Shown piece after piece: positions 1,482-38,390 of a DNA stretch of 38,390 bases; position 1 is the first letter of the stretch; each line of letters begins with the position of its first letter. Made by a program: the position numbers and the translations under genes. The stretch covers positions 1 to 38,390 of the forward strand of contig NIVC01000141.1 in NCBI GenBank assembly GCA_002269645.1, written 5' to 3'. Source of the stretch: Macrostomum lignano (taxonomy: Eukaryota). The notes beneath the pieces were generated by a model. That model did no database searches, was not told where the DNA came from, and saw only the letters and a program-made list of their open reading frames with translations.

Positions 1482-2271
1482 GGGCCATTCCATATAATTA
1501 TGGTCATAACATGACAGACTATTTTTACTTATAAAATGAAATCTAATAATAGAATATACTAAACCAATATTTTGAATGAAAGATTATTTTGTCAACAATA
1601 TGTTTATAAAGTTTCATATAGATATCATCATTAGTATAGATGCTATTAAACCTTGAATGGCACTTATGGTCGTAACAACAGGATTTTTGACATATAAAAA
1701 ACTAAAAGGTAAAAGTCTTATAACATTTTTCATTTTTGATACCGGTATTTTGCAATATTTTTTTTAATTTGACTAAGAACATTTTTAGAATCCATACTCT
1801 TTTATTAGAATATATAAACCCAAAAAGGCAACAAAGATACAAAAGAAAAGGCAGCCTTATGGTTATAACATTATGGTCGTAACATATTTTTTTCTGTCAA
1901 TTCAGTAACTTTGAAGTACTAATATATTAAAAATATAATAGATTATATGGTTGCTAATGTTTTTATCTGATGATGCAAGTACTATAATTTTATATATAGT
2001 TTGTTTTAACCTTCTAAAGCTTTCTATTTGTTTTTAAAAGGTACATAAACTTAATGATGTCTTTTGCTTAGAAAATGTCCAATTTTTTACAAAAATAACT
2101 TTTTGCCAATTGATAACATACTAATCCAACATTTTATCATTTATTTATTCTTAGATTGTATACATTACATACAAAAAAGATTTGGTAAAAAATGGCTGAT
2201 AAGGCAATGACAAGCAAAAATATTGACTTTTTTCCTTTTTCCAAATATGTCCATCTTATATGGAATGGGCC
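1482..2271. mobile_element. Decayed non-autonomous DNA transposon (MITE), GGGCC-ended, possibly PIF/Harbinger-like
   Basis: Imperfect ~27-bp TIRs (GGGCCATTCCATATAATTATGGTCATA / TATGTCCATCTTATATGGAATGGGCC), TTA-like flanks, and the internal motif TTATGGT(C/T)(G/A)TAAC repeated four times. Superfamily assignment is tentative. Confidence 0.5.
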
Positions 2272-2374
2272 ATTATAGAACTTATCATTATCCCTAAGCC
2301 TAATAATTATTTAATTAGGTCTAACCTATAGGCATTAATTAGGCATTTTTACAACTTACCCCTGGTCCACCACA

Positions 2375-2424
2375 ATTTACGGTGGCCAGATCAAGCCAGA
2401 TCAGCCAGCAGTTGCGCATGTATG
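2375..2424 (-). mobile_element. Solo end of the CATACATGCGCAAC-ended MITE family (see 5864-6164)
   Basis: GGCCAGATCAAGCCAGATCAGCCAGCAGTTGCGCATGTATG resembles the reverse complement of the left end at 5864. No partner end was found. Confidence 0.5.
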
Positions 2425-3087
2425 CCACATAGTAACAAAAAACAATGGGTTTATTTTTTGGGCCATATGGGGTTTTTTGGCCCCTTGAAAATCTTATTAG
2501 CAATTTAATTTTTGGTATCAGAGGCCAATCTAGCAACTTTATTTTCCCCATGCCAGTTGCCAATTTCAAAAAATGATTTTGAAAGTGTAATAAATGTGCC
2601 ATATAAATCTAAGTTGTGGCAAATAGTCACAATATACTAAATCTCTTAGATCCAACTGGTATTTCAGTCTAAAGCCTGAATGCCTGAACCGATTTTTTCA
2701 AACTTGCTTCATTTAATTGGAAATTCTTGTGAGATTATGTGGGTGTAATTGCATAAAAAAAATTGAATGGGAAGATGGTTAAGTATTTGAAAAACTTCTT
2801 GCAGTTTTCTTGCAATATTTTCTTGCAGTGAGGGCTCAATATGTCTATGGCTATAGACTAAACTTCAACTTCTTGAGCTGATGCTACACTATAAATAATT
2901 ACATATGAGTATTTGAAAACATGCTTTTCTGCATAAAGGAGAGATATCAGCCAGTGCACTTTAAAAGTATTGAAGTATTGTGCAACTGTGTATAGGCCTT
3001 ACTGCTATATATCACTCAATGTGTATATCACTGCTATATATTTGACTGCAGTGCCAAACCATATATGGCTGATGCTAAAAATTATCT

Positions 3088-3438
3088 GGATTGCTTGCTG
3101 TCTGAGGAATGCTTGCTGTCTGGGAGATGCTTGCAGTCTGGGAAATGCTGCTATCTAGGAGATGCTTGCTGTCTGGGGGATGCTTGCTGTCTGGGGGATG
3201 TTTGTTGATGCTTGCTGCTTAAGGGATTGCTTGCTATCTGGGAGATGCTTGCTATCTGGGAGTTGCTTGCTATCTGGGAGATGCTTGCTGTCTAAGGAAT
3301 GCTTGCTGTCTGGGGGATGCTTGCTGTCTGGGGGATTCTTGCTAATGCTTGCTGTCTGGGGGATGCTTGCTAATGCTTGTTGTCTAGAGGATGCTTGCTA
3401 ATGCTTGCTGTCTGGGGGATGCTTGCTTTCTGGGAGAT
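3088..3438. repeat. 18-bp minisatellite (GATGCTTGCTGTCTGGGG), ~19 degenerate copies
   Basis: Periodicity is directly visible and explains the spurious ORFs 2970-3158 and 3162-3401. Confidence 0.9.
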
Positions 3439-3982
3439 TCTTTGAGTTAGGCTAATAAAGAAGGGTCTAAGGCCCTGAGCTCCTGCTGTAGACCAGAATA
3501 TGCCCCAGTCAGTGACAATATGCACTAAGAGTTTGTGCTTGAAAGGATAAGCACTATTTGCTGATTGAGAATTTGTTTTGGGTTGATGAAGGAAACTTTT
3601 TTGGCTGATGAAAGTTTTGATTCATGGCAATTTGGTGTCATTTTTAAGGCCCTGCCTCCCTCCCACCCCCAGCGGGGGCTAAATGGCTAGTAAGTTGCTA
3701 AAATTGACAATGTCAGTAACAAGTCCCAGACAATCTCATTCCCATAGTCATATAGTGCATACACGTTTAATGAGCCTTGAAAATATATCTTTGAGAATTT
3801 GGCTAGTTGCTAATATGCAACCAAAATAACCATTGGTAACTGGATTTTGAGCCCCAAGGGCCAGCTGGAAACTGAATTTCCAACCTTAAAAAACCTAGAC
3901 AACAACTAGACACAGTCTAATTTTCAGCAATAAATCTTTTACCAATGGGTATTTGGATACAAAAACATGAGAAACTGTGTCC

Positions 3983-5342
3983 TACATATGTAATGCAAAA
4001 CTTAAGCAGGAGAAATGTAGTCTCTGCCACATGCAAAAACTTGGACAAGGTGGGTGATCAGCTTGTCCAGTTCCTTTCAAAAAATAGATTTTTCTGTCCA
4101 TCTCAAACATTATAAAGCTGCTTCTTTAACCATTGCTGGGTCTTAAAAATGCACCTGGCGTAGGCTGTTCTTGATTTGGTTGTCTAGCTAGCAGTCCACA
4201 AATTCAAATCAGGGGAGTAAGGGGGCTGATTAAGGATCTCCACTTGTTGCTTTGTAAAGAAGTCTTGTACAGACTATTTAACATATGGTTGAGCATTGTC
4301 ATGCTGCCATACCAATTCATTAAGATATGTAGAACAACTTCTCAGAGAATGCCATTTGTTGCCCATACTTTGAACAAACTGGGTATACAGGTCACCATCA
4401 AGGCTCTTTCTGTATGGCAGTGCTTGAACACAAAAATCTTTATTGCCAGTGAAAAAAATGCCCAACATGCATTTCAAAGGTGTTAGTTTGCCGGAAGGAA
4501 CCTGTGGTTAGGCTGTATCAACCAATATCTAAGCCTAAGCATCCTTCTGTATGAACTCTATATCATATCAAACCCATATCTTATCCTCAACAGTGTAGAT
4601 GTTGTTTTTCTGCTCACCTAATCTCACAAAACAGTCCTTGATAATGGCTGCATGCAGTCTCCTCTGCTCCATCTGCTGTGCTATCAGAATCTTTGGTACC
4701 CAGAAAGAAGCAACATTGTGAAATTTCAGGATATCTATTAGGATTCTGTAGATACTTATAGTAGGTATCTCAGTCTTCAAAAATCTCTCACACAGTGATA
4801 TGTGGATCATCACTGACAAGCATCAAAATTTCTTGCAACCTGTCATCCCAACTTGCAGAAACAGGCTAGCCACATTGGGGCAGGTCTTCAAATGATGTCT
4901 ATCTTCTAGATTTATAAGTTAGCCAGCCAGTTTTTTATGGTGGCATAGCATGGTGCTTAGTCATTCCAACTCTGACTTAGTATACAGTTAATTTTTGCAG
5001 CATTCTTGCCAAGTTGCTTTTCTATATAAGCAAAAAACTGGGCCTTTTCCTTATTGTAACTCATTTCATTATTTCACTCATTTCATCTATAGAAAAGTAT
5101 GATAGGCAACTTAGAAACAGATAGACAACTACTAACTTTAGGCACCAGTAAAAATGCTTTGAAACCACAGCTCTGGTTAGAGTTTGTGACCATAGAAATT
5201 TAGGTTGAGTACACATTGCACTATAGAAGCTAGGCTTCACATTCTTCCTGATAGATTTTAAATATTCAACTGAGAGCCCAAACTCTACATAGCTGCTTGG
5301 CCTATATACATGTGCTTGTGTATAATTTTTCATTCATTTGTA
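3983..5342 (-). mobile_element. Full-length but dead mariner transposon; transposase pseudogene ~5064->4002
   Basis: Minus-strand translation through stops and frameshifts gives APCYATIKNW (HTH), FWVPKIL (WVPHEL motif), EDKIWV (decayed DETWV, first D), WQHDNAQPY (second D), QPPYSPDLNL (YSPDL motif) and C-terminal GRDYI. The ~1.36-kb length is typical of mariners. Degenerate TA-ended TIRs lie at ~3983-4003 and ~5324-5342. Confidence 0.85.
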
Positions 5343-5863
5343 TACTTGTACTGCAGTTTAGAAGTTACTATAGGGGCTAAATACTTTTGGAACACTATTA
5401 TTATCATCATAAGTCCCTAGCCATTATGTCCATTGATACACATTTTTAAATAATGACTTTTCTTGACCTTTAGTCTAAAGAAATTTTTCTTAGCTATACT
5501 TGGCCTTTACCTTTTTTCTATTTCATTCTTTCAATTGCCTATCTAGTCAATTGTGGCTTGCCTTTATTTCCTTATTTCTCAACCTTTAAAATAATATTCA
5601 ACTATTGCCTTTAATATTCTATCACTTCTTGCAATATGCCTAAAGAAATAGAAATTATTTTTTATATTATATCTGTAAAGTATTTCATTTCCTTTTTGTA
5701 GACTCTTGTCATTTCTTTTTTAATCTAAGTATTTCCCAGGAAAGGCCTTGCATCCTTCTATAGGTAGGTCTTCATACCAAAATGACAAAAGCTCTTAGTT
5801 GCTTTTTTCTATTTTTCTATTTAGCTTTCTTATATATAGCAAAAATTTGCCATGACCTATCAC

Positions 5864-6164
5864 CATACATGCGCAACAGTCGGCCGAGTTGGCCGATCTA
5901 GCCAACCGATTTGGCGGCCAACCAAGGAAGTTGCAAAAATGCCCACCCAAAAAACACCCAAGTAGTAGTACTAAGTAGCTGACGAGGCATTTTGGCTTAG
6001 TAAGACAGTCATAGTTACGAGTACTTCTACCGTTTACCCAAAGTTTCGTTAATTTTGCTTTAGGTTTTTTACATGTAAGTCGCATTTTTGGCCAAGAACT
6101 ATGTCGCATTTTTGTTAAAACTAAGTCACATGGCTGACCGAATTTTGGAGGTTGCGCATGTATG
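5864..6164. mobile_element. 301-bp MITE with 14-bp TIRs and 8-bp TSD (hAT- or P-type)
   Basis: Perfect TIRs CATACATGCGCAAC / GTTGCGCATGTATG. Flanks are CCTATCAC (5856-5863) and CCTATTAC (6165-6172), differing by one C>T. Confidence 0.8.
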
Positions 6165-6219
6165 CCTATTACTATGAAACTCAATAGTATTTTATTTTAT
6201 AGATCTTTTCTGCTCTAAA

Positions 6220-7150
6220 TTTTGTAGCAGTTAACAAGAGAATTATCTGCCCATTAAAATGACTTTCTATTTATTTTTTTATCTGCTGGCATTCTATAGA
6301 TATGAGCAATTTTATGCCCCACCCCCCTGTGCTACTTCTACAAATTGCCATACACCAAAGCTTTGTACCTGATGCACAAAACAACGAAACATTCAAAGAA
6401 TCAACAAAACATCTGCAGCATGAAATCTGCAGTCCAAAGTTCACTGTTTCACACCGCACGATGACTGCGGAGTTGGAACTGTCAAAGATATCCGCCCACT
6501 AGGTACTGTGGCTCCGCACCTTCTGCACCATGACATTGCAAGTCCCCACATGGCCAAGAATATAGAGGAGACGATCGAGCAAGCAAATATTAAGCTGCTC
6601 TCACCAACGCCTTCTCTTTAGATTTGTCAATAGCTGACTTTTCCATCTTTCCAAAGATAAAGAAGCTGCTACATGGACAAATCTTTGCTTGTTGTGGGAG
6701 CCTGGGGAAGCATTGATTCGCCAAGTTCTCCTTCATGATATGCCGCGCTCAGATATTGCTGATGCCCTTGATGACATGCACAGCCGATGGCAGAAGTGTG
6801 TGCAGTGCAGCAGTGACTATGTGGAGAAGCCTCAGGACAATTTTGATGATTAACTTTTGACTGTTCTTTCCTCAGGTTTCATGCTGCGGATGTTTTGTTG
6901 ATTCTTTGAATGTTTTGTTGTTTTGTGCATCAGGTACAAAGCTTTGGTGTATGACAATTTGTAGAAGTAGCACAGGGGGTGGGGCATAAAATTGCTCATA
7001 TCTATAGAATGCCAGCAGATACAAAAATAAATAGAAAGTCATTCTAACGGGCAGATAATTCTCTTGTTAACTGCTACAAAATAAGCATTTCTGATTGGTC
7101 AGAAAAGGCTGTTGTAAAGAAAGTGCACCGACTTTTGGGACACCCCTCTG
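6220..7150 (+). mobile_element. Mariner-derived fold-back element: ~210-bp inverted arms around a transposase C-terminal fragment
   Basis: Arms 6220-6429 and 6873-7081 are ~96% identical inverted copies. The interior ~6520-6852 reads LLHHDIASPH..SLDLSIADFSIFPKIKK..RWQKCVQCSSDYVEK (mariner C-terminus). The right end resembles a mariner TIR (ACTTTTGGGACACCCCTC). Confidence 0.8.
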
Positions 7151-8014: not shown

Positions 8015-8392
8015 ATGTCCTCTGGACCAATCATTACTAAAGTTCAATGGGGCTCTATACTGGTGAGTGGCAAGGACAGGCCCTACAAAGATGCTAAAGT
8101 TTGGCCAACAGGCAGTCGCGCTTGGGACTGGTCTGAGACAGGCACCTCGCATAACCCCGGGGTTCAACCAACTGACCTAGATGAACTGTTTGACAAAAGC
8201 CATTACTTGGACGCTTTGGTGATCTCCTGCGGCATGGAGCTGGTGTTGCAAGTTCCGGAGAGTACTGTTCTGTATGCCAAGGAGCGATGCGCTCAGGTCT
8301 TTGTACTGCAGACTGAGGAGGCTGTCTTTAAATACAACGAGCTGGTGCGCGAGGGCCAGAGAGTTGCTGGATTATTCCACTCCACCTGCTGA
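8015..8392 (+). CDS. AAMDC: Mth938 domain-containing protein (AAMDC), intronless, 125 aa
   Basis: WG..YKDAKVWPTGSRAWDWSETGTSHNPGVQP..LQTEEAV..YN.L..GLFHSTC matches the AAMDC family from end to end. The start is in a gccATG context. Confidence 0.95.
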   Translation: MSSGPIITKVQWGSILVSGKDRPYKDAKVWPTGSRAWDWSETGTSHNPGVQPTDLDELFDKSHYLDALVISCGMELVLQVPESTVLYAKERCAQVFVLQTEEAVFKYNELVREGQRVAGLFHSTC

Positions 8393-9759
8393 TAGTGCTT
8401 GATTCATTGAGTCTTTTAGCATCTTTATGCTAAAATCCTCATGAAGTCCTCGCATGCACCATGTAGCCTAGCTTCTTGCTGTGAGTCTAATCAACTTAAC
8501 TCTGTAATAAATTGCTTTTTGTTGTTTTACTTCATGGTTTTGGTTAAAAAGTTAAGTTTTAAAGGCTCTACTGCACCAGCTATCTATTTTATTCTGTCCT
8601 GTTCAGAAACTAACCTATACATGTAGCTGTTCGAACAACCTATTTTGTTGTTTGAGTACCCTCATCATGGTTCCAGATTGGAGCTCAGAATTTGGGTCTG
8701 CTGGCTCTTCCCACCTGCAAGTACTTCAAGGTGTTGCTGCTTTCGGTCCTTCATAACACATCGCTTTTTACAAACTCTAGAATTATATTTTTACCAAAAG
8801 TATATATCTGAAATTCTTTAATTTTTTTATAAATACTCACGTGCCCACCAGATTTTTTTCTAACGCCTGAGTTGATCATGAACATGCGCGTGAGTCGACT
8901 TCTCCGAACTGATTTTTTTTCCTGTGAAGCAGTTTTAAAACCTTGGTAGTAAGGAAGTGATCTTAATTTGAGCATGTTATGCCCAATGTTATTTTTTAGT
9001 CTACTGCGAACTTTAGAAGGATTTTCTATCAGGAAAGAACAGCACATGCTTGTGCGGCAGTAAAGATCCTATTGCGTGAAGCGAACACCAATGAAATGGG
9101 TTATAGAAATCATATATATACTAGCGTTCAGTGAGAATGAAGCCTGTCCGCCCTCGTCCCTTGGTCCCCTCTCGCCCTCCTGCGCTCGTGTCCTCGCCCC
9201 CTCGCCGCTCCGGCTCTCCGCCTCTTCGCCTCCTCAACTGCTCCGCTAGCTTGCCCCAAGAATCGAGCCTGAACTCTGCTATCCTGATTTAACAAAGAGA
9301 TAAATGTGGCACAGTGTATTTCTATGGTGACATTTTTTGAAAAAATGGCCACCCCAGATTTTTACTATCATCAATAGATCATGTATGTCCAGAGAGAATG
9401 CTACAAGACTTTAAAAAATCCATCGAGCAGTTGCTAAGAAACTACTGTTTTTCTGTTTTTAATGCTGTTTTATGCTGTTTCGTGCTATTTGTTTTTGTTT
9501 TTCTAGTTCAAACAGAAAATCACTTATAAGCTTAAGGTCCATTTGTTTAGCCAACAAATAGGCTGTTTTTTACACACATTTCATATGCTAATCAAAATGA
9601 ATGTTCCAAAAATACAGGGTACAATTGTGTGATTGAATGTAACAAATAGGTTTTGTACTAGCTGTACTACTTCTCTATTGAGGGGAGACTGTGTGTGCAT
9701 GATTTGGAGTTGAAGAACGCAGTCACTCATCTATTACTCAATCAAATAGTGTGCTATAC

Positions 9760-9891
9760 ATTGCGCAATGCACACAAGTTTGCTGAGCTAAAAACTTGTC
9801 TGCTCAGCAATCAATGAATATATATAAGTCGCTCTTATCGATTGATTTCACTTTAATCTAACTAGAGAAGTTTTTATATTCATTGCGCAAT
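9760..9891. promoter_or_regulatory. Putative transposase promoter: two perfect ATTGCGCAAT palindromes flanking a TATA-like tract
   Basis: ATTGCGCAAT at 9760-9769 and 9882-9891, TATATATAAG at ~9819-9828, and a small inverted repeat TTGCTGAGC/GCTCAGCAA at ~9780-9810. Function is inferred. Confidence 0.45.
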
Positions 9892-9970
9892 CTCTGCGTC
9901 TCATTACATATCAGATTTGTTGTGTAGCACCTTTCTTAATCGACACCAAGCACGCTCAGTGTTAGGCATT

Positions 9971-11956
9971 ATGAGTAAAAGCAGCAGTGCCAGAACGCAC
10001 GAAGATGCTCGTCTCATCGTCTGCCTCATCTGCATGCATAAGGGCAAGGAAATGCGCCGGATAAATGAGCACATGCAGTCACTCATCTCAGAGTTCAAGA
10101 TGCATGGCTACGATACGCAGGACGATCGGCTACCAAGTGCTCTGTGCACAAAATGCAGGATAACGCTGCTAGAGTACGAGAAAGGAAACTTTTCGTCCTC
10201 GCTGCCCGACTTCGACCACTCTAAGATTGGAGCCCAGCCTCCTCGAACACGAAGCCGAGCAGCTACTCGATGCAACTGTATTGTGTGTCAGGCTGCCAGA
10301 GAAAGCTCCGCAAACTTTGGACATCCAGCAGCAGTTAATCGGCGACCACGAGGAAGGCCAAGCGCTGACAGTCAAAGTAGGATTGGTTGCGAGCCCACTG
10401 CCAGCACTGTGTCAAAAACTCGACGCCCAGTCAGCATGAAGCTCTGTGTGAAGTGCCTCTCGCAGCTAAATCGAGGCAAGTCACATGTCTGTACTCCTGC
10501 TACAAGGGCACATAATGCAGAAGGCTTTTACATGGAAGTGGAGCCACCATCTCAGAGTACGCCGAAGCAACCACAGCAGCTGAGCGTCAGCAGCATGGTG
10601 AGCATTCAGCAGGATATGGGCCTCAGCACGCGCTCTATGCTGAAGCTGGCTCACCATATTAGAGCAGCGTCGGGTTCAAAAACAGCTGTAGAGTCGTACC
10701 TCCAACAAAAGCTGTCTGACATTCACCACCAGCTCGACAGCTTTTTTGAACTACAACAGTTGGACTTCGTCAACATGGAGCGAGGAGTTGTGACAGAAGT
10801 AACATCACGTCCAGCTGTTATTTGTGTGCGCATTCAGCAGCTTCTCGAGCAAATTATTCAAGAAAGACAACTGAACCCATCGACCTGTATGATTAAGGTT
10901 GGCATTGATGGAGGTGGTGGGTTCTTCAAGATCTGCCTGTCTGTGTTTGATTCCAGTTGGTGTGTTGACTCCACTGAGCCTTCGCAGGCAGCCTGTAGCA
11001 GCAACTCTCGCAGCAGTCGGCTAAAGCACTCCGGTGTTAAACGAATTCTTATTGTAGCCATCGCACCAGCCATTCAAGAAAATTACCAGAACCTGGAGTT
11101 GCTGTGGAGGGCAGCTGGACTGAGCAGTCTTCAAGGCAAATTTACCATCGCTAGCGACTTAAAGCTGTGCAACATGCTGCTTGGGCTTATGGCTCACAGT
11201 GCTGCTCATCCCTGCTGCTGGTGCGATGCCCACAAGAATAAGCTATTGCAGAAGGGCACAGATCGCACACTGAAGCTTCTCGAAGACAGCCATGCAAACT
11301 TCCAGGCTTCTGGCTCCAAGCTTGCAGCTGCCAAGAATTTTGGAAATGTGGTACGTCCCTGTCTTCTAGAAAATTTCCCAGCCTCAACAATGGTCCTAGA
11401 AATTGTACCACCGCCCGAACTGCACCTGCTAACTGGAGTAGTAAATACCATTTACTGTAGTATGCAGTCAGTGTGGCCAGAGTGTGACAGATGGCTGCAT
11501 CACTGCCACGTCGCCAGGGAGGCAATTCACGGCGGCAGTTTTACCGGCAACAGCTGCAAAGTGCTCCTGCAGAATGTTGATGCTCTGGCATCGATGTGCC
11601 CGCTACAGTGCTTGCCGTACGTTGCTGCACTGCGCTGCTTCAGGCTTGTTGTGTCCAGCTGCTTTGGCAATGAACTGGCCTCCAATTTCCAGCAGACGAT
11701 CGCTGATTTTCAAGTGGCGTTCATGGACCTCGGGATCTCAGTGACACCGAAAGTTCACACAGTGCTGCATCATGTGCCACAGTTCTGTTTGATGCAACAG
11801 CGAGGACTTGGTCCCTGGAGTGAACAGGCATCTGAAGCAGTGCACCACGACTTTCAGCAGCTATGGGCGAACTTCAAGGTCAAGGATGTAGAAAATCCCA
11901 GCTTTGGAAGTCATTTGCTTCAGGCTGTGCGTCATTATAATAGCCGACATGTGTAG
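9971..11956 (+). CDS. RAG1-core-like DDE transposase with N-terminal Chapa-type Zn motifs (~661 aa from the first ATG)
   Basis: N-terminus H-x7-C-x2-C...C-x2-C...C-x2-C...RGRP, then C-x2-C-x9-H-x-C. Core motifs: KVGIDGGGG (D, nt 10907); ASDLKL..LLGL..HPCCWC (D, nt 11156; compare RAG1 GYDEKL..GL..CTLC); TPKVHTVLHH (compare YFHKTLAH); GLGPWSEQASEAVH (E, nt 11834; compare GAWASEGNESGNK). The first ATG is at 9971; the ORF track starts at an upstream TTG. Confidence 0.92.
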   Translation: MSKSSSARTHEDARLIVCLICMHKGKEMRRINEHMQSLISEFKMHGYDTQDDRLPSALCTKCRITLLEYEKGNFSSSLPDFDHSKIGAQPPRTRSRAATRCNCIVCQAARESSANFGHPAAVNRRPRGRPSADSQSRIGCEPTASTVSKTRRPVSMKLCVKCLSQLNRGKSHVCTPATRAHNAEGFYMEVEPPSQSTPKQPQQLSVSSMVSIQQDMGLSTRSMLKLAHHIRAASGSKTAVESYLQQKLSDIHHQLDSFFELQQLDFVNMERGVVTEVTSRPAVICVRIQQLLEQIIQERQLNPSTCMIKVGIDGGGGFFKICLSVFDSSWCVDSTEPSQAACSSNSRSSRLKHSGVKRILIVAIAPAIQENYQNLELLWRAAGLSSLQGKFTIASDLKLCNMLLGLMAHSAAHPCCWCDAHKNKLLQKGTDRTLKLLEDSHANFQASGSKLAAAKNFGNVVRPCLLENFPASTMVLEIVPPPELHLLTGVVNTIYCSMQSVWPECDRWLHHCHVAREAIHGGSFTGNSCKVLLQNVDALASMCPLQCLPYVAALRCFRLVVSSCFGNELASNFQQTIADFQVAFMDLGISVTPKVHTVLHHVPQFCLMQQRGLGPWSEQASEAVHHDFQQLWANFKVKDVENPSFGSHLLQAVRHYNSRHV

Positions 11957-14086
11957 GACATGTAGTCAGTGTGGACTTTGACATTGTTTTCACTCTTAAT
12001 GTGTAATTTATATTGACATTGTACAACTACGTTTCAAGCTGAGTTTTTATATTGTACAAGCATTCTTTAAACTTATACTAATAATATAATTTATTAATGT
12101 TGAAAGAAAAACATTGAATAATGTTTTTGATACCAATTTGCCTATTATAGCCTGTATCAAAGCAAAAAAATGAAAACAGCATGAAACAGCATGAAAAACA
12201 GAAAAACAGTAGTTACTCAGCAACCGCTCGACAAGATTTTTTTAATATTGTGGCTTCCTCTCTAGAAAAATGTGATCTATTAATGATGGTAAAAATCTTG
12301 AGTGGCCATTTTTTTCAGAAAATCTTACCAAAGAAATACACTGTGGTGGACAAACGTCAATTCGTGAAACAGTATCCTGTGGCTCTATTTTCACTGAATT
12401 GCTTAACAAATTTGCATGATCAATATCCTATCAGAAATTGCAACCAACATGAATTAGTAATAAACATACTTATTGAAGGTTAGAGATCGAGAGAAGCAAA
12501 TCGCGAACCTTTATTTGTTTTAGTCGTTATCAGCTGCTTTCAATCATGGCATACATTCATCATGTAATACAGCTACTCTTAACACCTAAGGCTAATGAGA
12601 GTTCTCCCTTTTATTTAATTCAGTGCTAGCTGCAGTATGCACATGTAAATGGATTCATTGTGCAATTTACTGTATAAGAACCAAAAACAGTTTCTCTATA
12701 ATTAATGGAAATACTGAACAAGAATTATATGGGAGCTACATGTATGAAGTTTGCTACTAGCAGGAATTTTGCTAGTAGCAATTGGATTTTGCACGTAATA
12801 TAGATTAATCTAGCTCTTTGACATTGATTATGTTTTACCGCAGAAGGCAGGTACTTAAAGTTTTAACATACATACTAACATACCACTCTCAGCCTAAGTA
12901 TACATGTAGCTGGTAGTGACCGCACGAGCTAGAAGCTTTAATACGATCGTACAACATGTACGGATCAGAGAGTTGGCTGACTAACTTTGTCAATAAGCAA
13001 ACAAATAAGAGAACAAGGCACCAAGTTCGGCTGGCAAAATCCTTGCTACAAAATTCCTTCTTGTAAGCTTCGGCTAGCAAACTACGGCTAGAATATTTCG
13101 GCAAGCAAATTTCTCGACAGCATTTAATTGGGCTAGCTATAGCATATCGATCGTACCTGCACCCAAGAAAAAACATGCCGGATTTTAAAATAAGACACAT
13201 TTAATTCTCATAACGCTATCGATTTTCAGTATGGAGCTTCTATCAACACTTAGAGCGTTTTTAGGCCAGGCCAGGAACACCTGAAGCCCTGAATGACCAA
13301 GAGGTTTTGTTCTGGCTAATTATTACGACGTGCTAACAGAATAAATGAAATTAAAATTAAAGTCCAGAAAACGTACGAAAAATTTATAATAGTCGTAGCT
13401 GTTTAATTCAGGTATCTAAAAAACTTGAAAAAGTTACCTTTGACGATAACAACTTGTTATAACTTTTGTAAAAGTAAATTATTTTCAAAAAAATGAAATC
13501 TGACGAGTTATAGAATATAGGTCCCTCGATAAACCTCTTTCCTTACGAGATTTTCCAAACTTGACCACTAAAATACCATACAATTGGAACTAAAATATAT
13601 CAATTGCGTAAGAGCCCCCCCCCCAGGGCTGAGGCGCAGGGCCTTTGTTTGCCCATTACTTATAAACTGAACTGAACTTTCTTTGCGAGAAAGGAATGAT
13701 CCCTGTTCCGGAGCATCGATTGGCAGGAAAATAGAAGGAATTGCATGTTTTTACACATTTACTACAGGCGTAATTGTGCAAATTTTAGAAAATTTTCGAT
13801 CTCGTAAATTAGGTTCTACTTCTAGGGCTAGGCCAGGCCTACTCATCAAAAATTGCCAAGTTATATGAAAGATGGTTCCTTGTAGAATTGTTGTCAGTTT
13901 TAGTCAGCTACTAGGCCAAGACATAGTTTTATTTTGAATATGGAATATATGCACTAAATTAGGCTACTAAATTAGGCCTTTTTAACCAGGCAGGCAATAC
14001 AAAAAATTGTATTTGTTACATCAAATTTGTTGAATAAATATAGAAAAGCATTTACTTTACAGAGAGCTTGTGTTGTTATGTGCATC

Positions 14087-14266
14087 TTGCATGGCAGCTG
14101 TACACCCAGTGTTTAAATTGCATGCATGGCAGCTACAGCTATCCATCCACATATTGTTTAAATTGTATGCATGGCAGCCATCCATTCCACTAACCTTGTA
14201 GGCCTTTTTAATTGCCTAGTAGGCAGTTTTAATTGCATGCATGGCAACCATCTACCCAATGTTTAG
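14087..14266. repeat. Irregular imperfect direct repeat, 4 copies of a (TTTAAA)TTGCATGCATGGCAGC core
   Basis: The core recurs at ~14087, 14118, 14163 and 14230. Confidence 0.55.
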
Positions 14267-16442
14267 AATTAGATATCTTCCAGTTTGTTTTGCAATATTA
14301 TTCTCAAGTTTGAATTGGTGCTACAATGTAATGACACATTAGAAAATGATGTCTATTGCCAAAAGGGATGCAAAATAGCACTATACTATTAAAGACATTC
14401 TTATTTCACTGGCTATCTAAGGAATTTCTATGGCACCACTTATACCTTGGCATAACATTTGGTGGCTAGACCTGGTGCTGTGTTGCATTGGGTGTCACAT
14501 TATTATCCTCTGTAACTAGATCCTCTGTTTTCTACCCTCCAACTGTTACTGTTACTTGTCTGCTTCTATTTCATATCTCTTTTGGGCATAGGTATTGTTT
14601 TCTAATGTTTCACTATATTGATATACCATTTTAAACTAAAATAAACAGGCAAATAATATTGCAAAACAAACTAGAAGATTGCCGAATTTTTTAATTGCAT
14701 ACATGGTAGTCAGCAGATGAGCAATATTGCAAATACCAAATTGGATCCTTTCCCTCAAATCTGTATATTGCTACTCACAGAACTAATAATTTATTAGGCC
14801 TACTTGTTTCATCTTATACAATGTAATCTCAATTTCTTGCAAATCTCTTTGTATTCTTGAGCATCTTTGCATTTCTACTTTTTTGCAAGGCCAACAGATT
14901 TTTTACTAGCCAACTACTGATATATCTACATCTATAGTTGTTTTTAATGAATAAGGGCAGCAACACCTTGTGGGTGCTTAATAGAAATGAATTGCATCTA
15001 GCCAGCAACAATTAACTTACCCCACTAACTAAGGCTAAAAAGGAAGATCAACCTGCTAAAGTGGCAAATGATAATCACCAAAATCTGCCTATTAGTCTGC
15101 TTGACAACCTTTGCAATGCCAAACTAGTTGTTGGCAGTTGTTGCAACAGAAGCATCTTGCCTGCTATTCACTGTAATATAGATCACTTGTGATTATAAGA
15201 CCTGTAAAAGCATCATACCTTCTTGGGTATGCATCCTATAAATGCAGATTAACTTCTATCTATACAACCTTCCTTGTCACCTTGTTGCTCTTGCCATTGT
15301 TCATTTTGCACCCTTATTCACACATTTTTATTCCTGGCTCTATTTAAGATGGGCCATGATATAGTATGGCTAGCAAGTCCCATTAGCCAAGCAAGAGTTT
15401 TTTTATATTTTGCTTTACTAGGTTTCCTAATATCTAAAAAACAAAATAACTAAATTTTTAACTGTTCTATAACTAGAAAAATAATAAATATTGCTATCAC
15501 TTTGTCCTAATAGTTATAGTTTCATTTGATTGCTTAACATAAATAGATTATACGAAAAGGCACTGTAAATGATTAAGTCAGTAGCTCTGGCCCACTGATT
15601 CTAATTAAGAATAGTAATAAATCAATATTTTTACAACCAATACCCATGCCTTAGCCTTTTCTGTTGTTATAGAATTTCACACATTCTTTTAGGTTTCCAT
15701 ATCTGCTTGATTTTTTTCCATCTATCATAGTCTTTTTTGAATGGTAGGATGACCTGCCGATTGAACTGCAACTAGCCTTTTAAATACTCCTGTCTTGTCT
15801 TATTTGACTAAAATTAGGGCATTTAGTAAATGTTTTCTGTGACAACTTTTATTGGGGAAGTCTAGAACAAAGTACAGCAGTTGTTAAATGTATTTTGGTA
15901 AGTAACCTTATTCACATGTCAAAGCAGTATTTAAAGCAGCTAATTTGGCAGCTGACTGCCTAATCAAATAAAAATTTTATTTGCTTCTTTGATTTTATTT
16001 GCTTTTGATAATTTTATTTGCTTTTATTGTTTCTTTGACACTCAAGTATTCTATTTGCAATTAGTCATTGTGTGGTATAAAAAGCTCATTTCAAAGCTTT
16101 TATAAATGCAGACAACCATTACAAGTTTGTACAAGCTGTTTACAAAAGTTGAAATCAGCAATGGAAGCATTTCTTTTTTTGTTTTAATATGAGCTATATG
16201 TGATAATTTGTTTATCACAATTATCTCATTTCCTAACTGTCAATGAAGCTTAATGTTTATCACTTTTTGACTTCTATTAATAATTTTTTTCAAATTTGAC
16301 TTAGCAGCTTCTATTATGTGAAAGATGAATAGCAGACACAGCATTTTGTTATTGCTAGTCCAAAAAAAAAGGAAAGTAATGTTAGATAGAGTTGCAAGTA
16401 TTGCATATCGCGAAAGCCTAGATAATAAAATAATTACAATTA

Positions 16443-18075
16443 ATGGCTTCCGCCTTTGCCTGTCGTTTGCGGCAGAGCCTTCTTGGCCGGCTGCCAGGCC
16501 TGTCCAATGCTCGCCGGCTTCTGTCGGCTCCGCCATCTGGCATGCCGCCCGACGATGAGAAGCCAATGTTCCCCGGCTCGCGGTCGAGCTTTACCACCCA
16601 GCTGGACTTTATCCATCCGGAGAACTTCGAAGGAATTCCCGTTTATAGATTAGTGAACCGACGCGGCGATCTAGTTGATGGAGCGCCGGAACCTACTCTG
16701 GCTGGCAACAAAGACCTGTGCCTGCAAGTGTACGAGACAATGCTCCAGCTTAATATTATGGATAAGATTCTGTACGATTCACAGAGACAGGGTCGGATCA
16801 GCTTCTACATGACCAGCTTTGGCGAGGAAGGCATTGTTGCCAATGCGGCCGCTCTTAATCCAAACGATCTTGTGTTCTGCCAATACCGCGAATCCGGCGT
16901 TCTCATGCAGCGCGGCATGGAGCTGGAACGCTTCATGGACCAGTGCTACTCTAACGATAGCGATATAAACAGGGGCCGTCAGATGCCAGTTCACTATGGC
17001 AGCAAAGATCACAGCTTTGTGACCGTGTCTTCTCCGCTGGCTACCCAAATGCCGCAGCTAGCGGGGCCGCCTACGCGTTCAAACGGATGCAGAACGGCCT
17101 GTGCGTTGTTTGCTACTTTGGCGACGGCTCAGCGTCGGAGGGCGACGCGCATGCCGCTTTGAACTTTGCCGCCACGCTAGACTGCCCCGTAATGTTTGTC
17201 TGCCGAAATAACGGCTACGCAATATCTACGCCTACGTCTGATCAATATCGCGGCGATGGTATAGCGATTCGGGGCCCGGCATTTGGCATACCGACTGTTC
17301 GAGTCGATGGCAACGATGTGTTCGCTCTGTACGAGGTGACTCAACAGGCCCGACAGCTGTGCTTAACTGAGATGCGGCCGACTCTAATTGAGATGATGAC
17401 TTATCGATTGGGGCATCACAGCACGTCGGATGACAGCTCGGCTTATCGGTGAGTTTTTGCTTTAGCTGTCGCGCGTTACCAGGTAATACTGCAGAGTTTT
17501 CTACTGTTGCCTACCTAATTGGAGCCGTGCCGAACAGGGGGGGGGGGTTGACCAGTCGCAGGAGACTTTGGGCACTGCAGCAAACTTCCTGTCAGTGAAC
17601 TCTTACTCGCTGGAAGTCCTTTGAATTTTGGTATCTCAGCATTGCTCAGATCGGACTGGGTGTAAACACATAGACTTTATGCACCATGGAATGGGTGTGC
17701 TGATTTGAAAATATAAATTCGTGATTCGACTGGCTATTTCTCTATTTTCCTTACAGTTCCGTTGACGAGTTAAGCTTCTGGGATCGGGAAGATAATCCGA
17801 TAATTAGGATGAGAAAATTTCTCACCAAACGCGGCTGGTGGAGCGACGAACAGGAGACGGCGACTAAGCAAGCGATTAGAAAACGGGTGCTGCAGAAATT
17901 TGCCCAAGCCGAGAAGCGATTGAAGCCGAATCCTATGGAGATGTTTAGTGACGTCTGGGCTCGAATGCCGCCGAGGCTGCGCCAACAGATGGAGGATACT
18001 AGGCGCCATCTGGAGGCTGAGACCAGCCACTATCCCGAGTTAAAGAACTATAAACCTATAGCTGATGTTGAGTAG
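16443..18075 (+). CDS. BCKDHA: 2-oxoisovalerate dehydrogenase E1 alpha (mitochondrial); exons 16443-17448 and 17757-18075; -1 frameshift at ~17057
   Basis: Motifs [26 protein letters not shown]-like ([11 protein letters not shown]), [21 protein letters not shown] (ThDP motif), [11 protein letters not shown] and [15 protein letters not shown]|SVDE. GT-AG intron at 17449-17756. Restoring one G at CAG(G)CTAGC joins the two ORF-track frames. Confidence 0.93.
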
Positions 18076-19321: not shown

Positions 19322-21382
<2,061 letters not shown>

Positions 21383-21395
21383 CTGTTCTGTATAA

Positions 21396-21825
21396 CAGGG
21401 GTTGGAAAACTTTTTACCTCAAGGGCGATAGGGGGGAGATAGGAGACGGAATAAAAAAGAGATGAGAGATGAGATAAGAGACAAGAGAAGGGAGAGGAGA
21501 GGATGGGAGAGGAGAAGAGGAGAGGAGAAGAGAGAAAAGATAAAGGACAAAAAAAAAGAGAGGAGAGAAGAAGAGAGAAGAGGAGGAAGATGAGATGAGA
21601 GGAGGGAGAGAAGAGGAGGGGGAGGAGAGAAGAGAAGAGAGAAGAGGAGGAAGATGAGAGGAGGGAGAGAAAAGGAGGGGGAGGAGAGAAGACAAGAAAG
21701 AAGAGGAGGAAGATGAGATGAGAGGAGGGAGAGGAGGGGGAGGAGAGAAGAGAAGAGGAGGAAGATGAGATGAGAGGAGGGAGAGAAGAGAAGGAAGCCC
21801 GCTGTCGGAGTGTTGCCGACCCCTG
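21396..21825 (+). mobile_element. hAT (Charlie-like) MITE filled with a GA-rich polypurine tract
   Basis: Ends are CAGGGGTTGGAAAAC and GTGTTGCCGACCCCTG. The interior ~21430-21795 is almost pure A/G. The 8-bp flanks match only 5/8, so a TSD is not firm. Confidence 0.7.

Positions 21826-22236: not shown

Positions 22237-23262
<1,026 letters not shown>

Positions 23263-26169: not shown

Positions 26170-38390
<12,221 letters not shown>

What the first reader, a model, noticed from the sequence alone, without database searches (positions are those of the whole stretch)
9306..12349. Intact, probably recently active RAG1-related transposon with exact RSS heptamers at both ends and a 4-bp TSD
Seen: both termini read CACAGTG, the TSD GTGG is perfect, and the ORF has no stops and keeps the D-D-E triad plus both Zn-binding pairs (CCWC; H-x4-H). 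It also keeps its CpGs, whereas neighbouring TEs are decayed. Established: CACAGTG is the V(D)J RSS heptamer; RAG1 core derives from Transib-like transposases; Transib and ProtoRAG make 5-bp TSDs; Chapaev elements have CAC..GTG ends with 4-bp (Chapaev3: 3-bp) TSDs. Inference: this is a young, possibly mobile element combining a RAG-type heptamer with a Chapaev-type duplication length, so it may be informative for RAG/Transib/Chapaev evolution and usable as a native transgenesis tool.
Basis: partly seen in the sequence, partly recalled or inferred. Interest (0 to 1): 0.85.

Follow-up and report, generated by a model that had tools for sequence, protein, structure and literature searches.

The report
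Intact Chapaev-type DNA transposon copy
This is a complete, undamaged-looking copy of a Chapaev-type cut-and-paste transposon in an animal genome; its enzyme is predicted to fold like the antibody-gene recombinase RAG1, a kinship already described for this transposon group, so it is a new family of a known kind.

Summary
A 3,036-bp element (9310-12345) has about 186-bp terminal inverted repeats, ends CACAGTG...CACTGTG, a perfect 4-bp duplication GTGG, and one uninterrupted 661-aa ORF.

The protein has the Chapaev signature: D313/D396/E622, C415-x2-C418, an invariant ELH motif and H596-x4-H601. It is homologous to the published Chapaev3 transposase Garfield_BM (hhalign E 2e-15).

An AlphaFold model (pLDDT 87) matches only RAG1, amphioxus RAG1-like and HzTransib among solved structures. 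Sequence-profile alignment puts its D, D, E, CxxC and HxxxxH on RAG1 D600/D708/E962, C727/C730 and H937/H942.

Five of six related complete elements also have perfect 4-bp duplications and CAC-type ends. So "RAG-type heptamer plus 4-bp duplication" is simply the Chapaev hallmark, and the RAG1 kinship is already published.

The closest protein is only about 43-48% identical, so this is a new family. The wider protein family holds more than 10,000 sequence clusters.

Recent activity could not be tested: there is one copy in the window and the host genome was not searchable.

One addition of mine: the ends have a Transib/RSS23-like layout (heptamer, 23-bp spacer, A-rich nonamer), conserved across distant relatives. 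The protein also carries an AT-hook (RRPRGRP).

The parts
9306..9309 (.). Left copy of the 4-bp target-site duplication, GTGG
   Evidence: Read directly. The inverted repeat ends exactly at 9310. Five of six related complete elements also have perfect 4-bp duplications.
9310..9495 (+). Left terminal inverted repeat, about 186 bp. It holds heptamer CACAGTG (9310-9316), a 23-bp spacer (9317-9339), the A-rich nonamer-like block AAAAAATGG (9340-9348), and subterminal ATGCTGTTT-type short repeats around 9458-9500.
   Evidence: Inverted-repeat pairs I1, I2, I3 and I11. Arm-to-arm BLAST E = 2e-41. Heptamer/spacer/A-run register.
9496..9970 (+). Internal 5' non-coding region between the left repeat and the start codon (presumed promoter and 5' UTR)
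   Evidence: No long ORF here. Its function is inferred only.
9971..11956 (+). Transposase gene: single exon, 661 aa, intact
   Evidence: ORF list. 82 homologues, the best at E = 4e-181. 88 of 89 conserved columns retained. AlphaFold pLDDT 87.
9998..10300 (+). N-terminal two-zinc domain, residues about 10-110. Ligands are H10; C18, C21, C59, C62; and C101, C103, C106. It looks like a Chapa/NZD domain.
   Evidence: Ligands conserved in 45-47 of 47 homologues. The model of this domain best matches ZAD domains (7pok, E = 0.09-0.19, probability 0.77-0.99 for its three chains). The ligands line up with RAG1 residues 102-212, but E = 0.15, which is not significant.
10340..10360 (+). AT-hook-like motif RRPRGRP (residues 124-130) in a disordered linker
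   Evidence: A GRP core is present at this position in 27 of 47 family members. The segment has low pLDDT (116-152). Binding to the A-rich block of the repeats is inferred.
10445..10492 (+). CCHC zinc knuckle (C159, C162, H172, C174)
   Evidence: C159, C162 and H172 are conserved in 44-45 of 47; C174 in 37 of 47.
10868..11953 (+). RAG1/Transib-like catalytic core. D313 = 10907-10909; D396 = 11156-11158; C415-x2-C418 = 11213-11224; E483-L-H485 = 11417-11425; H596-x4-H601 = 11756-11773; E622 = 11834-11836.
   Evidence: Foldseek: all 37 significant PDB hits are RAG1, BbRAGL or HzTransib. hhalign against mouse RAG1 gives E = 1.6e-4 and 2.1e-4 and aligns these residues to D600, D708, C727/C730, H795, H937/H942 and E962. 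hhalign against Chapaev3 Garfield_BM gives E = 2.3e-15.
11957..12158 (+). Internal 3' non-coding region
   Evidence: No ORF.
12159..12345 (-). Right terminal inverted repeat. It holds heptamer CACTGTG on the + strand (12339-12345), a 23-bp spacer (12316-12338), and the nonamer-like block CATTTTTTT on the + strand (12307-12315, i.e. AAAAAAATG read inward).
12346..12349 (.). Right copy of the 4-bp target-site duplication, GTGG

Best explanation
The locus is one full-length autonomous copy of a Chapaev-group DNA transposon. This group is filed as CMC-Chapaev, or as the 'Chapaev clade of the Transib superfamily' in Kapitonov and Koonin's scheme. The copy belongs to a family not closely matched by any protein in the databases searched.

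The single gene encodes a 661-aa transposase with four parts:
- an N-terminal two-zinc Chapa-like domain;
- an AT-hook;
- a CCHC knuckle;
- a RAG1/Transib-type RNase-H core, with D313, D396 and E622 and a zinc site formed by C415/C418 and H596/H601.

Inferred mechanism, by analogy with RAG and HzTransib:
1. The transposase binds each end through the CAC-heptamer and the A-rich block 23 bp further in.
2. It pairs the two ends.
3. It nicks at the heptamer/flank border and releases the element, probably leaving hairpins on the flanking DNA.
4. It inserts the 3'-OH ends into target DNA with a 4-bp stagger, which yields the 4-bp duplication (here GTGG).

Shown here: the anatomy, homology, predicted fold, residue conservation and duplication length. 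Inferred: all chemistry, DNA-binding roles and current mobility.
For: Structure of the element:
- TIR, TSD and ORF anatomy.
- Perfect 4-bp duplications in five of six related complete elements: window GTGG, L042 ACGA, L044 TTAT, L006 GTAT, L015 CACC. L005 has GGTC/CGTC, a 3-of-4 match.
- CAC-type heptamers at every defined end.

Protein family:
- The Chapaev motifs C(2)C, LH and H(4)H are invariant or nearly so. They are defined as Chapaev hallmarks in PMC4079192.
- Homology to the published Chapaev3 transposase Garfield_BM: hhalign probability 98.5%, E = 2.3e-15; BLASTP E = 2e-11.

Link to RAG1:
- All 37 significant PDB fold matches are RAG1, BbRAGL or HzTransib. The best is E = 9e-12 and the next unrelated hit is E = 0.16.
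- hhalign against mouse RAG1 (sequence verified against PDB chains) aligns the DDE triad and the zinc ligands.

N-terminal domain:
- It is ZAD-like with a 1+3 ligand pattern, as described for type I Chapa domains.

Integrity:
- The ORF keeps 88 of 89 conserved columns.
Against: - No Chapaev sensu stricto reference protein (Repbase) was available, so placement within Chapaev rests on hallmarks plus homology to a Chapaev3 member.
- Sequence-level similarity to RAG1 is weak: hhalign probability about 50%, and a profile search against PDB sequences found nothing.
- The match of the N-terminal domain to RAG1's NZD is not statistically supported.
- Only one copy was seen, and no transcript or polymorphism data exist.
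- The two repeat arms differ (78-89% identity), whereas the arms of L005 and L006 are 97-99% identical.
Confidence: 0.85

Rival explanations
1. The copy looks intact but is an old, fixed, immobile insertion, either silenced or kept for a host function. The reader's 'recently active' would then be wrong.
For: - Only one copy in 38 kb, with no fragments or short derivative copies sharing these ends.
- CpG observed/expected is 0.61, below host exons at about 0.85-1.2, which suggests some exposure to methylation-driven decay.
- The repeat arms are only 78-89% alike.
- The exact protein is absent from a 15-billion-protein collection, so there is no evidence of multiple identical copies.
Against: - The 4-bp duplication is perfect and the heptamers are identical.
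- The 661-aa ORF has no stop codon, and 88 of 89 conserved residues are kept.
- A domesticated gene would usually lose its repeats and duplication.
- Divergence between the two arms is a family trait, not a clock.
Confidence: 0.3
2. It is a canonical Transib or a RAG-like (ProtoRAG/RAGL) transposon, not a Chapaev.
For: - The RAG1/Transib fold is the only structural match.
- The ends have the Transib-type layout of heptamer, 23-bp spacer and A-rich nonamer (consensus from PMC1131882).
Against: - The duplication is 4 bp, not 5, in the window and in four relatives.
- There is no RAG2-like second gene: the element has a single ORF.
- Homology to a Chapaev3 transposase (E = 2e-15) is far stronger than to RAG1 (E = 1e-4).
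- phmmer and profile searches do not reach RAG1 or HzTransib.
- An N-terminal zinc domain is present, which Transib lacks according to bioRxiv 10.64898/2026.01.24.700457.
Confidence: 0.04
3. It represents a separate, undescribed lineage lying between Transib and Chapaev. It would share Transib-type bipartite ends with the Chapaev-type duplication and N-terminal domain, rather than being an ordinary Chapaev.
For: - The heptamer-23-nonamer architecture is conserved in relatives that share only 30-38% protein identity.
- No open paper was found that describes such ends for Chapaev.
- Foldseek E-values are better against RAG1 than against HzTransib.
Against: - Every tested Chapaev hallmark is met.
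- The family is huge, with 10,866 clusters, which fits a well-known group better than a missed one.
- The original Chapaev descriptions (Repbase Reports 2007/2008) could not be read, so the end architecture may already be recorded there.
Confidence: 0.1
4. It is a CACTA/En-Spm or Mirage element, i.e. from one of the other CMC branches.
For: - CAC termini and short subterminal repeats (ATGCTGTTT type) in both arms.
- Weak Pfam DUF1280 hits in 7 of 47 homologues.
Against: - The termini are CACAGTG, not CACTA.
- The duplication is 4 bp, not 3 (CACTA) or 2 (Mirage).
- There are no hits to plant CACTA transposase Pfam families.
Confidence: 0.02

Closest known systems
Chapaev transposons (Kapitonov and Jurka 2007; CMC-Chapaev of Yuan and Wessler 2011 and RepeatMasker)
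   Same: - CAC...GTG termini and a 4-bp target duplication.
- A single-ORF DDE transposase with C(2)C, LH and H(4)H motifs.
- An N-terminal multi-cysteine zinc domain.
- An animal host.
   Different: - No close described family: the best database protein is 43% (BLASTP) to 48% (alignment) identical.
- The bipartite heptamer-23-A-tract ends and the AT-hook are not mentioned for Chapaev in any paper I could search.
Chapaev3 elements (e.g. Garfield_BM, Merrow, Conan; PMC4079192)
   Same: - Homologous transposase core (hhalign E = 2.3e-15) with all motifs collinear.
- CAC-type ends; Merrow_PM ends read CACTGTG.
   Different: - Chapaev3 makes 3-bp TWA duplications between A and T. This family makes 4-bp duplications with no evident consensus (GTGG, ACGA, TTAT, GTAT, CACC).
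- Identity to Garfield_BM is only about 21%.
Transib transposons (HzTransib; Kapitonov and Jurka 2005)
   Same: - The same predicted core fold (Foldseek E = 2e-5 to 2e-4).
- The same end layout: CACAATG, 23-bp spacer, AAAAAAATC in Transib versus CACAGTG, 23 bp, AAAAAA(A)TG here.
   Different: - Transib makes 5-bp duplications and lacks the N-terminal zinc (NZD/Chapa) domain.
- No sequence-level hit to HzTransib was obtained here.
RAG1 / RAG1-like (V(D)J recombinase; ProtoRAG)
   Same: - Best structural match (E = 9e-12, TM-score about 0.5-0.58 normalised to the target).
- D600/D708/E962, C727/C730, H937/H942 and H795 all have aligned, conserved counterparts.
- The identical D-19 residues-CxxC spacing.
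- The heptamer is identical to the RSS consensus.
- A GRP-type minor-groove motif is present together with an A-rich nonamer-like block.
   Different: - No RAG2 partner gene and no RING domain detected.
- A 4-bp rather than 5-bp duplication.
- About 12-14% identity over the structural alignments.
- Both ends are of the 23-spacer type, with no 12/23 asymmetry.

Membership tests
Chapaev (CMC-Chapaev) | Terminal inverted repeats with invariable 5'-CAC ... GTG-3' ends | tested here: met
   CACAGTG at 9310-9316 and CACTGTG at 12339-12345. The same holds in L002, L005, L006, L015, L042 and L044.
Chapaev (CMC-Chapaev) | Target-site duplication of 4 bp (3-4 bp for the wider group) | tested here: met
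   GTGG/GTGG in the window. Perfect 4-bp duplications also occur in L006, L015, L042 and L044; L005 matches at 3 of 4.
Chapaev (CMC-Chapaev) | DDE transposase with conserved C(2)C, LH and H(4)H motifs | tested here: met
   D313, D396, C415, C418 and E483-L484-H485 are invariant. H596, H601 and E622 are conserved in at least 45 of 47.
Chapaev (CMC-Chapaev) | N-terminal Chapa (NZD-like) two-zinc domain | tested here: inconclusive
   - The ligands are conserved in a 1+3 (type I-like) and CxxC...CxxC pattern.
- The domain model best matches ZAD domains such as 7pok, at weak E-values of 0.09-0.19.
- The ligands line up with RAG1 residues 102-212, but hhalign E = 0.15.
- The NZD structure 21WB did not appear among the Foldseek hits.
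Chapaev (CMC-Chapaev) | Sequence homology to, and phylogenetic placement with, named Chapaev transposases | tested here: inconclusive
   Homology to a published Chapaev3 member, Garfield_BM, is clear (E = 2.3e-15). Repbase Chapaev1/2 references were not available, so no tree was built.
Chapaev3 | 3-bp TWA duplication, inserted between A and T | tested here: not met
   The duplications are 4 bp and are not TWA.
Transib | 5-bp target-site duplication | tested here: not met
   A 5-bp reading fails in the window (TGTGG versus GTGGA) and in the relatives.
Transib | Ends built as CAC-heptamer, about 23-bp spacer, A-rich nonamer | tested here: met
   - The A-run starts at position 29-32 in 12 of 14 arms.
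- The pattern occurs 34 times in the 61 fetched loci versus 5.9 in shuffles.
- The Transib consensus is taken from PMC1131882.
Transib | Transposase detectably similar in sequence to Transib/RAG1 core | tested here: inconclusive
   The fold matches. hhalign against RAG1 gives E = 1.6e-4 at 50% probability. phmmer and hmmsearch against PDB sequences find nothing.
RAG-like (ProtoRAG/RAGL) transposon | Convergent RAG1-like and RAG2-like gene pair between the ends | tested here: not met
   There is a single ORF in 3,036 bp and no second gene.
CACTA/En-Spm | CACTA termini with a 3-bp duplication | tested here: not met
   The termini are CACAGTG and the duplication is 4 bp.

The most novel reading that the evidence does not exclude
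In this Chapaev lineage the transposon ends are true bipartite RSS23-type signals: a CAC-heptamer, a 21-24-bp spacer and an A7T block. The A-block would be read by the conserved AT-hook (RRPRGRP), in parallel with RAG1's GGRPR nonamer-binding motif. If so, the heptamer+nonamer signal, and a minor-groove reader for it, predate the split of Chapaev from Transib/RAG. Chapaev elements would then be a tractable outgroup for asking how RSS recognition arose.
Probability: 0.3. Interest if true: 0.6.

Novelty: new member of a known kind. Interest (0 to 1): 0.35.

Why it matters
No Chapaev transposase has been studied biochemically or structurally. The 2026 NZD preprint says explicitly that experimental work on Chapaev systems is lacking. 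An intact copy with clean ends is therefore a usable starting point for three things:
- testing whether Chapaev enzymes cut DNA the RAG/Transib way;
- asking what sets a 4-bp rather than a 5-bp stagger;
- dating the heptamer-nonamer signal and the N-terminal zinc domain relative to RAG.

It could also be tried as a gene-transfer vector in its host. As a genome feature, however, it is an ordinary transposon insertion between host genes. Comparable intact copies exist elsewhere, for example in Brassicogethes aeneus and Macrostomum lignano.

Tried and rejected
- Pfam scan of the protein: nothing above threshold, only weak DUF1280, zf-AD and RICH hits.
- phmmer and family-profile hmmsearch against all PDB sequences: no RAG1 or Transib hit, only spurious tropomyosin matches.
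- Exact-sequence look-ups of the transposase and two host proteins: not on record, so neither the host nor the copy number could be obtained.
- PCNA homology search to name the host: the best named hits are flatworms at about 70%, with no close species. The host stays unidentified.
- hhalign of the family against RAG1 residues 1-388: no hit. The N-terminal-only profile against RAG1 85-230 lines up the ligands, but E = 0.15.
- Foldseek of the N-terminal model: only weak ZAD matches, and the RAG1 NZD entry 21WB was not returned.
- Many metagenome contigs (L007, L009, L012, L013, L016-L018, L030) carry inverted repeats that run to the contig ends. Their true termini and duplications could not be defined, so I left them out.
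- L002 has only 3 nt of right flank, so no duplication check was possible.
- I considered dating the insertion from the divergence between its two arms and rejected this, because arm divergence is a family property.
- I considered E483 of the ELH motif as the catalytic E. I rejected it in favour of E622, because E622 aligns with RAG1 E962 while H485 aligns with RAG1 H795.
- The AT-hook/A-tract correlation across elements rests on too few cases: L005 lacks both, and L006 has the A-tract with only a degenerate GRGHP motif.
Full report
**1. What is in the sequence**

The window reads ...ATAAAT-GTGG-CACAGTGTATTTC... on the left and ...GAAATACACTGTG-GTGG-ACAAACG... on the right.
- GTGG lies at 9306-9309 and 12346-12349.
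- The heptamer lies at 9310-9316, and its reverse complement at 12339-12345.
- The heptamers are the tips of a long inverted repeat. The terminal 36 nt are 89% complementary and a further 163 nt are 78% complementary, with one indel between them.
- BLAST of one arm against the other gives E = 2e-41.
- Extending outward, complementarity stops exactly at the heptamers. The element is therefore 3,036 bp (9310-12345) and the direct repeat is exactly 4 bp. A 5-bp reading fails (TGTGG versus GTGGA).
- One ORF fills the middle: 9971-11956, 661 aa from the ATG that matches the N-terminus of its homologues.
- No other copy or fragment is present in the 38-kb window.

**2. The CpG remark**

CpG observed/expected is 0.61 for the element and its ORF.
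- Blocks at 2-6 kb and 14-16 kb show 0.05-0.13. One of them carries a decayed mariner-like ORF at 4568-4819 on the minus strand.
- The immediate flanks show about 0.4.
- Host exons (PCNA, cyclophilin, E1 dehydrogenase, Tudor) show 0.85-1.2.

The element keeps more CpG than some neighbours but less than host genes. This is a weak, ambiguous age signal.

**3. What the protein is**

*Database context*
- Pfam gives nothing significant.
- phmmer and a 47-sequence family profile find no RAG1 or Transib among PDB sequences.
- A search of 5.8 billion proteins finds 82 homologues, the best at E = 4e-181 but only 43% identical. Nearly all come from unnamed assemblies. The named ones come from the beetle Brassicogethes aeneus and the flatworm Macrostomum lignano.
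- An exhaustive profile search finds 10,866 clusters (50% identity level) at E <= 1e-3 and 1,716 at E <= 1e-30. This is a very large family.

*Conserved residues in the 47-sequence alignment*
- Invariant: D313, D396, C415, C418 and E483-L484-H485.
- Conserved in at least 45 of 47: H596, H601, E618 and E622.
- N-terminal ligands in at least 44 of 47: H10, C18, C21, C59, C62, C101, C103, C106, C159, C162 and H172.
- The window protein departs from the family at only 1 of 89 columns that are at least 85% conserved (family median 3, range 0-23). Its coding capacity looks fully preserved.

*Chapaev identity*
- C(2)C, LH and H(4)H are the three motifs published as diagnostic of Chapaev transposases. 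The other hallmarks are CAC...GTG ends and 3-4-bp duplications (PMC4079192).
- I took the published translation of a bona fide Chapaev3 transposase, Garfield_BM, from that paper's supplementary Figure S1.
- The family profile aligns to it with probability 98.5% and E = 2.3e-15 over 355 columns, with all motifs in register.
- The window protein alone gives BLASTP E = 2e-11 at 21% identity.

**4. Is it RAG1-related?**

*Fold*
- An AlphaFold2 model built on the family alignment is confident: pLDDT 87, pTM 0.71.
- Against 350,542 PDB chains, all 37 matches with E <= 1e-3 belong to three proteins:
  - RAG1 core (best 9jpu_A, E = 8.9e-12, about 580-610 aligned columns, TM-score 0.5-0.58 on the target);
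  - amphioxus RAG1-like, 6b40 (E = 3e-7);
  - HzTransib, 6pqy/6pqr/6pqn (E = 2e-5 to 2e-4).
- The next hit has E = 0.16, and no hAT or other DDE enzyme appears.

*Sequence*
- I wrote mouse RAG1 from memory. The tools confirmed it is 100% identical to PDB chains over residues 1-388 and 389-1010.
- hhalign of the family against RAG1 389-1010 gives E = 1.6e-4 (probability 50%, 296 columns). It aligns the following pairs:

| Window protein | Mouse RAG1 |
|---|---|
| D396 | D708 |
| C415 / C418 | C727 / C730 |
| H485 | H795 |
| H596 / H601 | H937 / H942 |
| E622 | E962 |

- The D-to-CxxC spacing is 19 residues in both proteins.
- A more permissive run (E = 2.1e-4, 452 columns) also aligns IDGGG with CDGMG, which puts D313 on D600.

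"RAG1-related" is therefore supported at the level of fold and active-site layout, although sequence similarity is marginal. This kinship is not new:
- Kapitonov and Koonin list Chapaev and Chapaev3 as clades of a broad Transib superfamily (PMC4411706).
- RepeatMasker files Transib and Chapaev together under CMC (bioRxiv 10.64898/2026.08.26.747230).

**5. The N-terminal domain**

- Residues 10-110 are modelled with high confidence.
- Their best structural matches are ZAD domains, at weak scores (Pita 7pok, E = 0.09-0.19, probability 0.77-0.99 for its three chains). Pfam zf-AD also gives weak hits.
- A 2026 preprint solved the RAG1 N-terminal zinc domain (NZD, PDB 21WB). It reports three things:
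  - its first zinc module resembles the Pita ZAD;
  - Chapaev 'Chapa domains' are NZD-like;
  - type I Chapa domains bind the second zinc with one N-terminal and three C-terminal ligands.
- The window protein fits that description. It has H10 plus C101/C103/C106, and C18/C21/C59/C62.
- A permissive hhalign lines these ligands up with RAG1 H102, C110/C113 and the later Cys pairs. However, E = 0.15, and the standard run finds nothing.

I score this feature as consistent but not demonstrated.

**6. Relatives elsewhere: ends and duplications**

I fetched 61 loci encoding relatives. Six other elements have both ends defined:

| Element | Ends | Flanking 4 bp (left / right) | Note |
|---|---|---|---|
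| L006 (M. lignano) | CACAGGT | GTAT / GTAT | intact ORF |
| L042 | CACAGGT | ACGA / ACGA | broken ORF |
| L044 | CACAGGT | TTAT / TTAT | broken ORF |
| L015 | CACAGTT | CACC / CACC | broken ORF |
| L005 (B. aeneus) | CACGGTG | GGTC / CGTC | intact ORF; duplication matches 3 of 4 |
| L002 | CACGGTG | not checkable | intact ORF; right flank too short |

- With the window, five of six checkable elements have perfect 4-bp duplications, and no target consensus is evident.
- These transposases share only 30-38% identity with the window protein.
- The family heptamer is CAC[AGT]G[TG][GT]. The exact RSS heptamer in the window is thus one of about a dozen permitted variants, not a special retention. 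A published Chapaev3 element, Merrow_PM, ends in CACTGTG.

**7. An added observation: RSS23/Transib-type ends**

- In both arms of the window element the heptamer is followed by exactly 23 nt and then AAAAAATGG (left) or AAAAAAATG (right).
- In 12 of the 14 arms of the seven elements, a run of 6-10 A begins at position 29-32. The A-to-T boundary sits at position 37-39, and at 37 in eight of those twelve arms. The spacers themselves are unrelated in sequence.
- The chance of such a run in a given 5-nt window is about 0.004-0.02 per arm.
- The pattern CAC-N4-N20-24-A6+T occurs 34 times in the fetched loci versus 5.9 (maximum 12) in shuffles. It also marks further one-sided ends in L019, L038, L048, L053 and L055.
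- This is the layout Kapitonov and Jurka reported for Transib (CACAATG, 23-bp spacer, AAAAAAATC) and compared with RSS23 (PMC1131882). Both arms here are of the 23 type.
- The transposase carries RRPRGRP (residues 124-130) in a disordered linker. A GRP core is present at that position in 27 of 47 homologues.
- AT-hooks bind A/T minor grooves, and RAG1's nonamer-binding domain begins with GGRPR (established knowledge). A role in reading the A-block is therefore plausible, but it is only inferred. The correlation across elements is too thin to test: L005 lacks both features, and L006 has the A-block with a degenerate GRGHP.
- No paper in the searchable library describes such ends for Chapaev. 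The original Repbase Reports could not be read.

**8. Mechanism**

- Shown: the element's anatomy, a conserved RAG1-type active site and zinc site, and a 4-bp stagger.
- Inferred by analogy with RAG and HzTransib: binding of paired ends through the heptamer and the A-block, nicking at the heptamer border, hairpin formation on the flanks, and integration of 3'-OH ends 4 bp apart.
- Nothing here shows present-day mobility.

**9. Context**

- The element sits between host genes. An Mth938-like ORF lies at 8015-8392 and an E1-dehydrogenase exon at 16443-17162. PCNA, cyclophilin and Tudor genes lie further on.
- PCNA's best named matches are flatworm proteins at about 70%, so the host is an unidentified animal, possibly a platyhelminth.

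**10. Verdict**

This is a real, intact, autonomous Chapaev-group transposon and a new family of a known kind.
- The RAG1 link is right but already published.
- The claimed unusual combination is the Chapaev definition.
- Recent activity is untested.

Interest is modest. It rises somewhat through the conserved RSS23-like ends and the AT-hook, which would make Chapaev a useful outgroup for RAG evolution if confirmed.

Noticed in passing
window 19335-19955 and 22313-22933: A 622-bp stretch encoding most of PCNA (N- and C-terminal domains) occurs twice, 3 kb apart, at 99.4% identity. It could be a recent local duplication or an assembly artefact.
   Followed up: partly
window 2001-6000 and 14001-16000: These blocks have extreme CpG depletion (observed/expected 0.05-0.13) while neighbouring host exons sit at about 0.9-1.2. 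This suggests patchy, heavy methylation or old repeats. The ORF at 4568-4819 (minus strand) looks like a decayed mariner-type transposase fragment.
   Followed up: partly
window 29132-29765 and 30882-31369: Two well-preserved 34-bp tandem arrays (18.6 copies at 97% identity and 14.3 copies at 94%). The first is open in three frames and creates long spurious ORFs.
   Followed up: no
window 21491-21794 and 35507-36609: Long purine/pyrimidine-biased (GGAGA / CTCTC-type) low-complexity arrays. Similar CT-rich arrays lie next to the related element in Macrostomum lignano (L006, about 5900-6550).
   Followed up: no
L002 174-6464: A related element is twice as long (at least 6.3 kb), with about 540-bp near-perfect terminal inverted repeats and about 2.5 kb of extra non-coding DNA after the transposase gene. 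Its left flank, GGTC+CACGGTG, is the same as in the beetle element L005.
   Followed up: no
L013, L016, L017, L018 (whole contigs): In several more distant relatives (29-30% identity) the inverted repeat runs exactly from the first to the last base of the contig and does not begin with CAC. Either these contigs stop inside very long repeats or those lineages have different ends.
   Followed up: no
window 9458-9500 and 12164-12196: Short subterminal repeats of the ATGCTGTTT(T/C) type occur 2-3 times in each arm of the element. They may be additional transposase-binding sites, as in CACTA elements.
   Followed up: no
window 8015-8392: A 125-aa ORF that looks, by eye only, like an Mth938-domain (AAMDC-like) host protein lies about 0.9 kb upstream of the insertion. 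I did not run it against Pfam.
   Followed up: no
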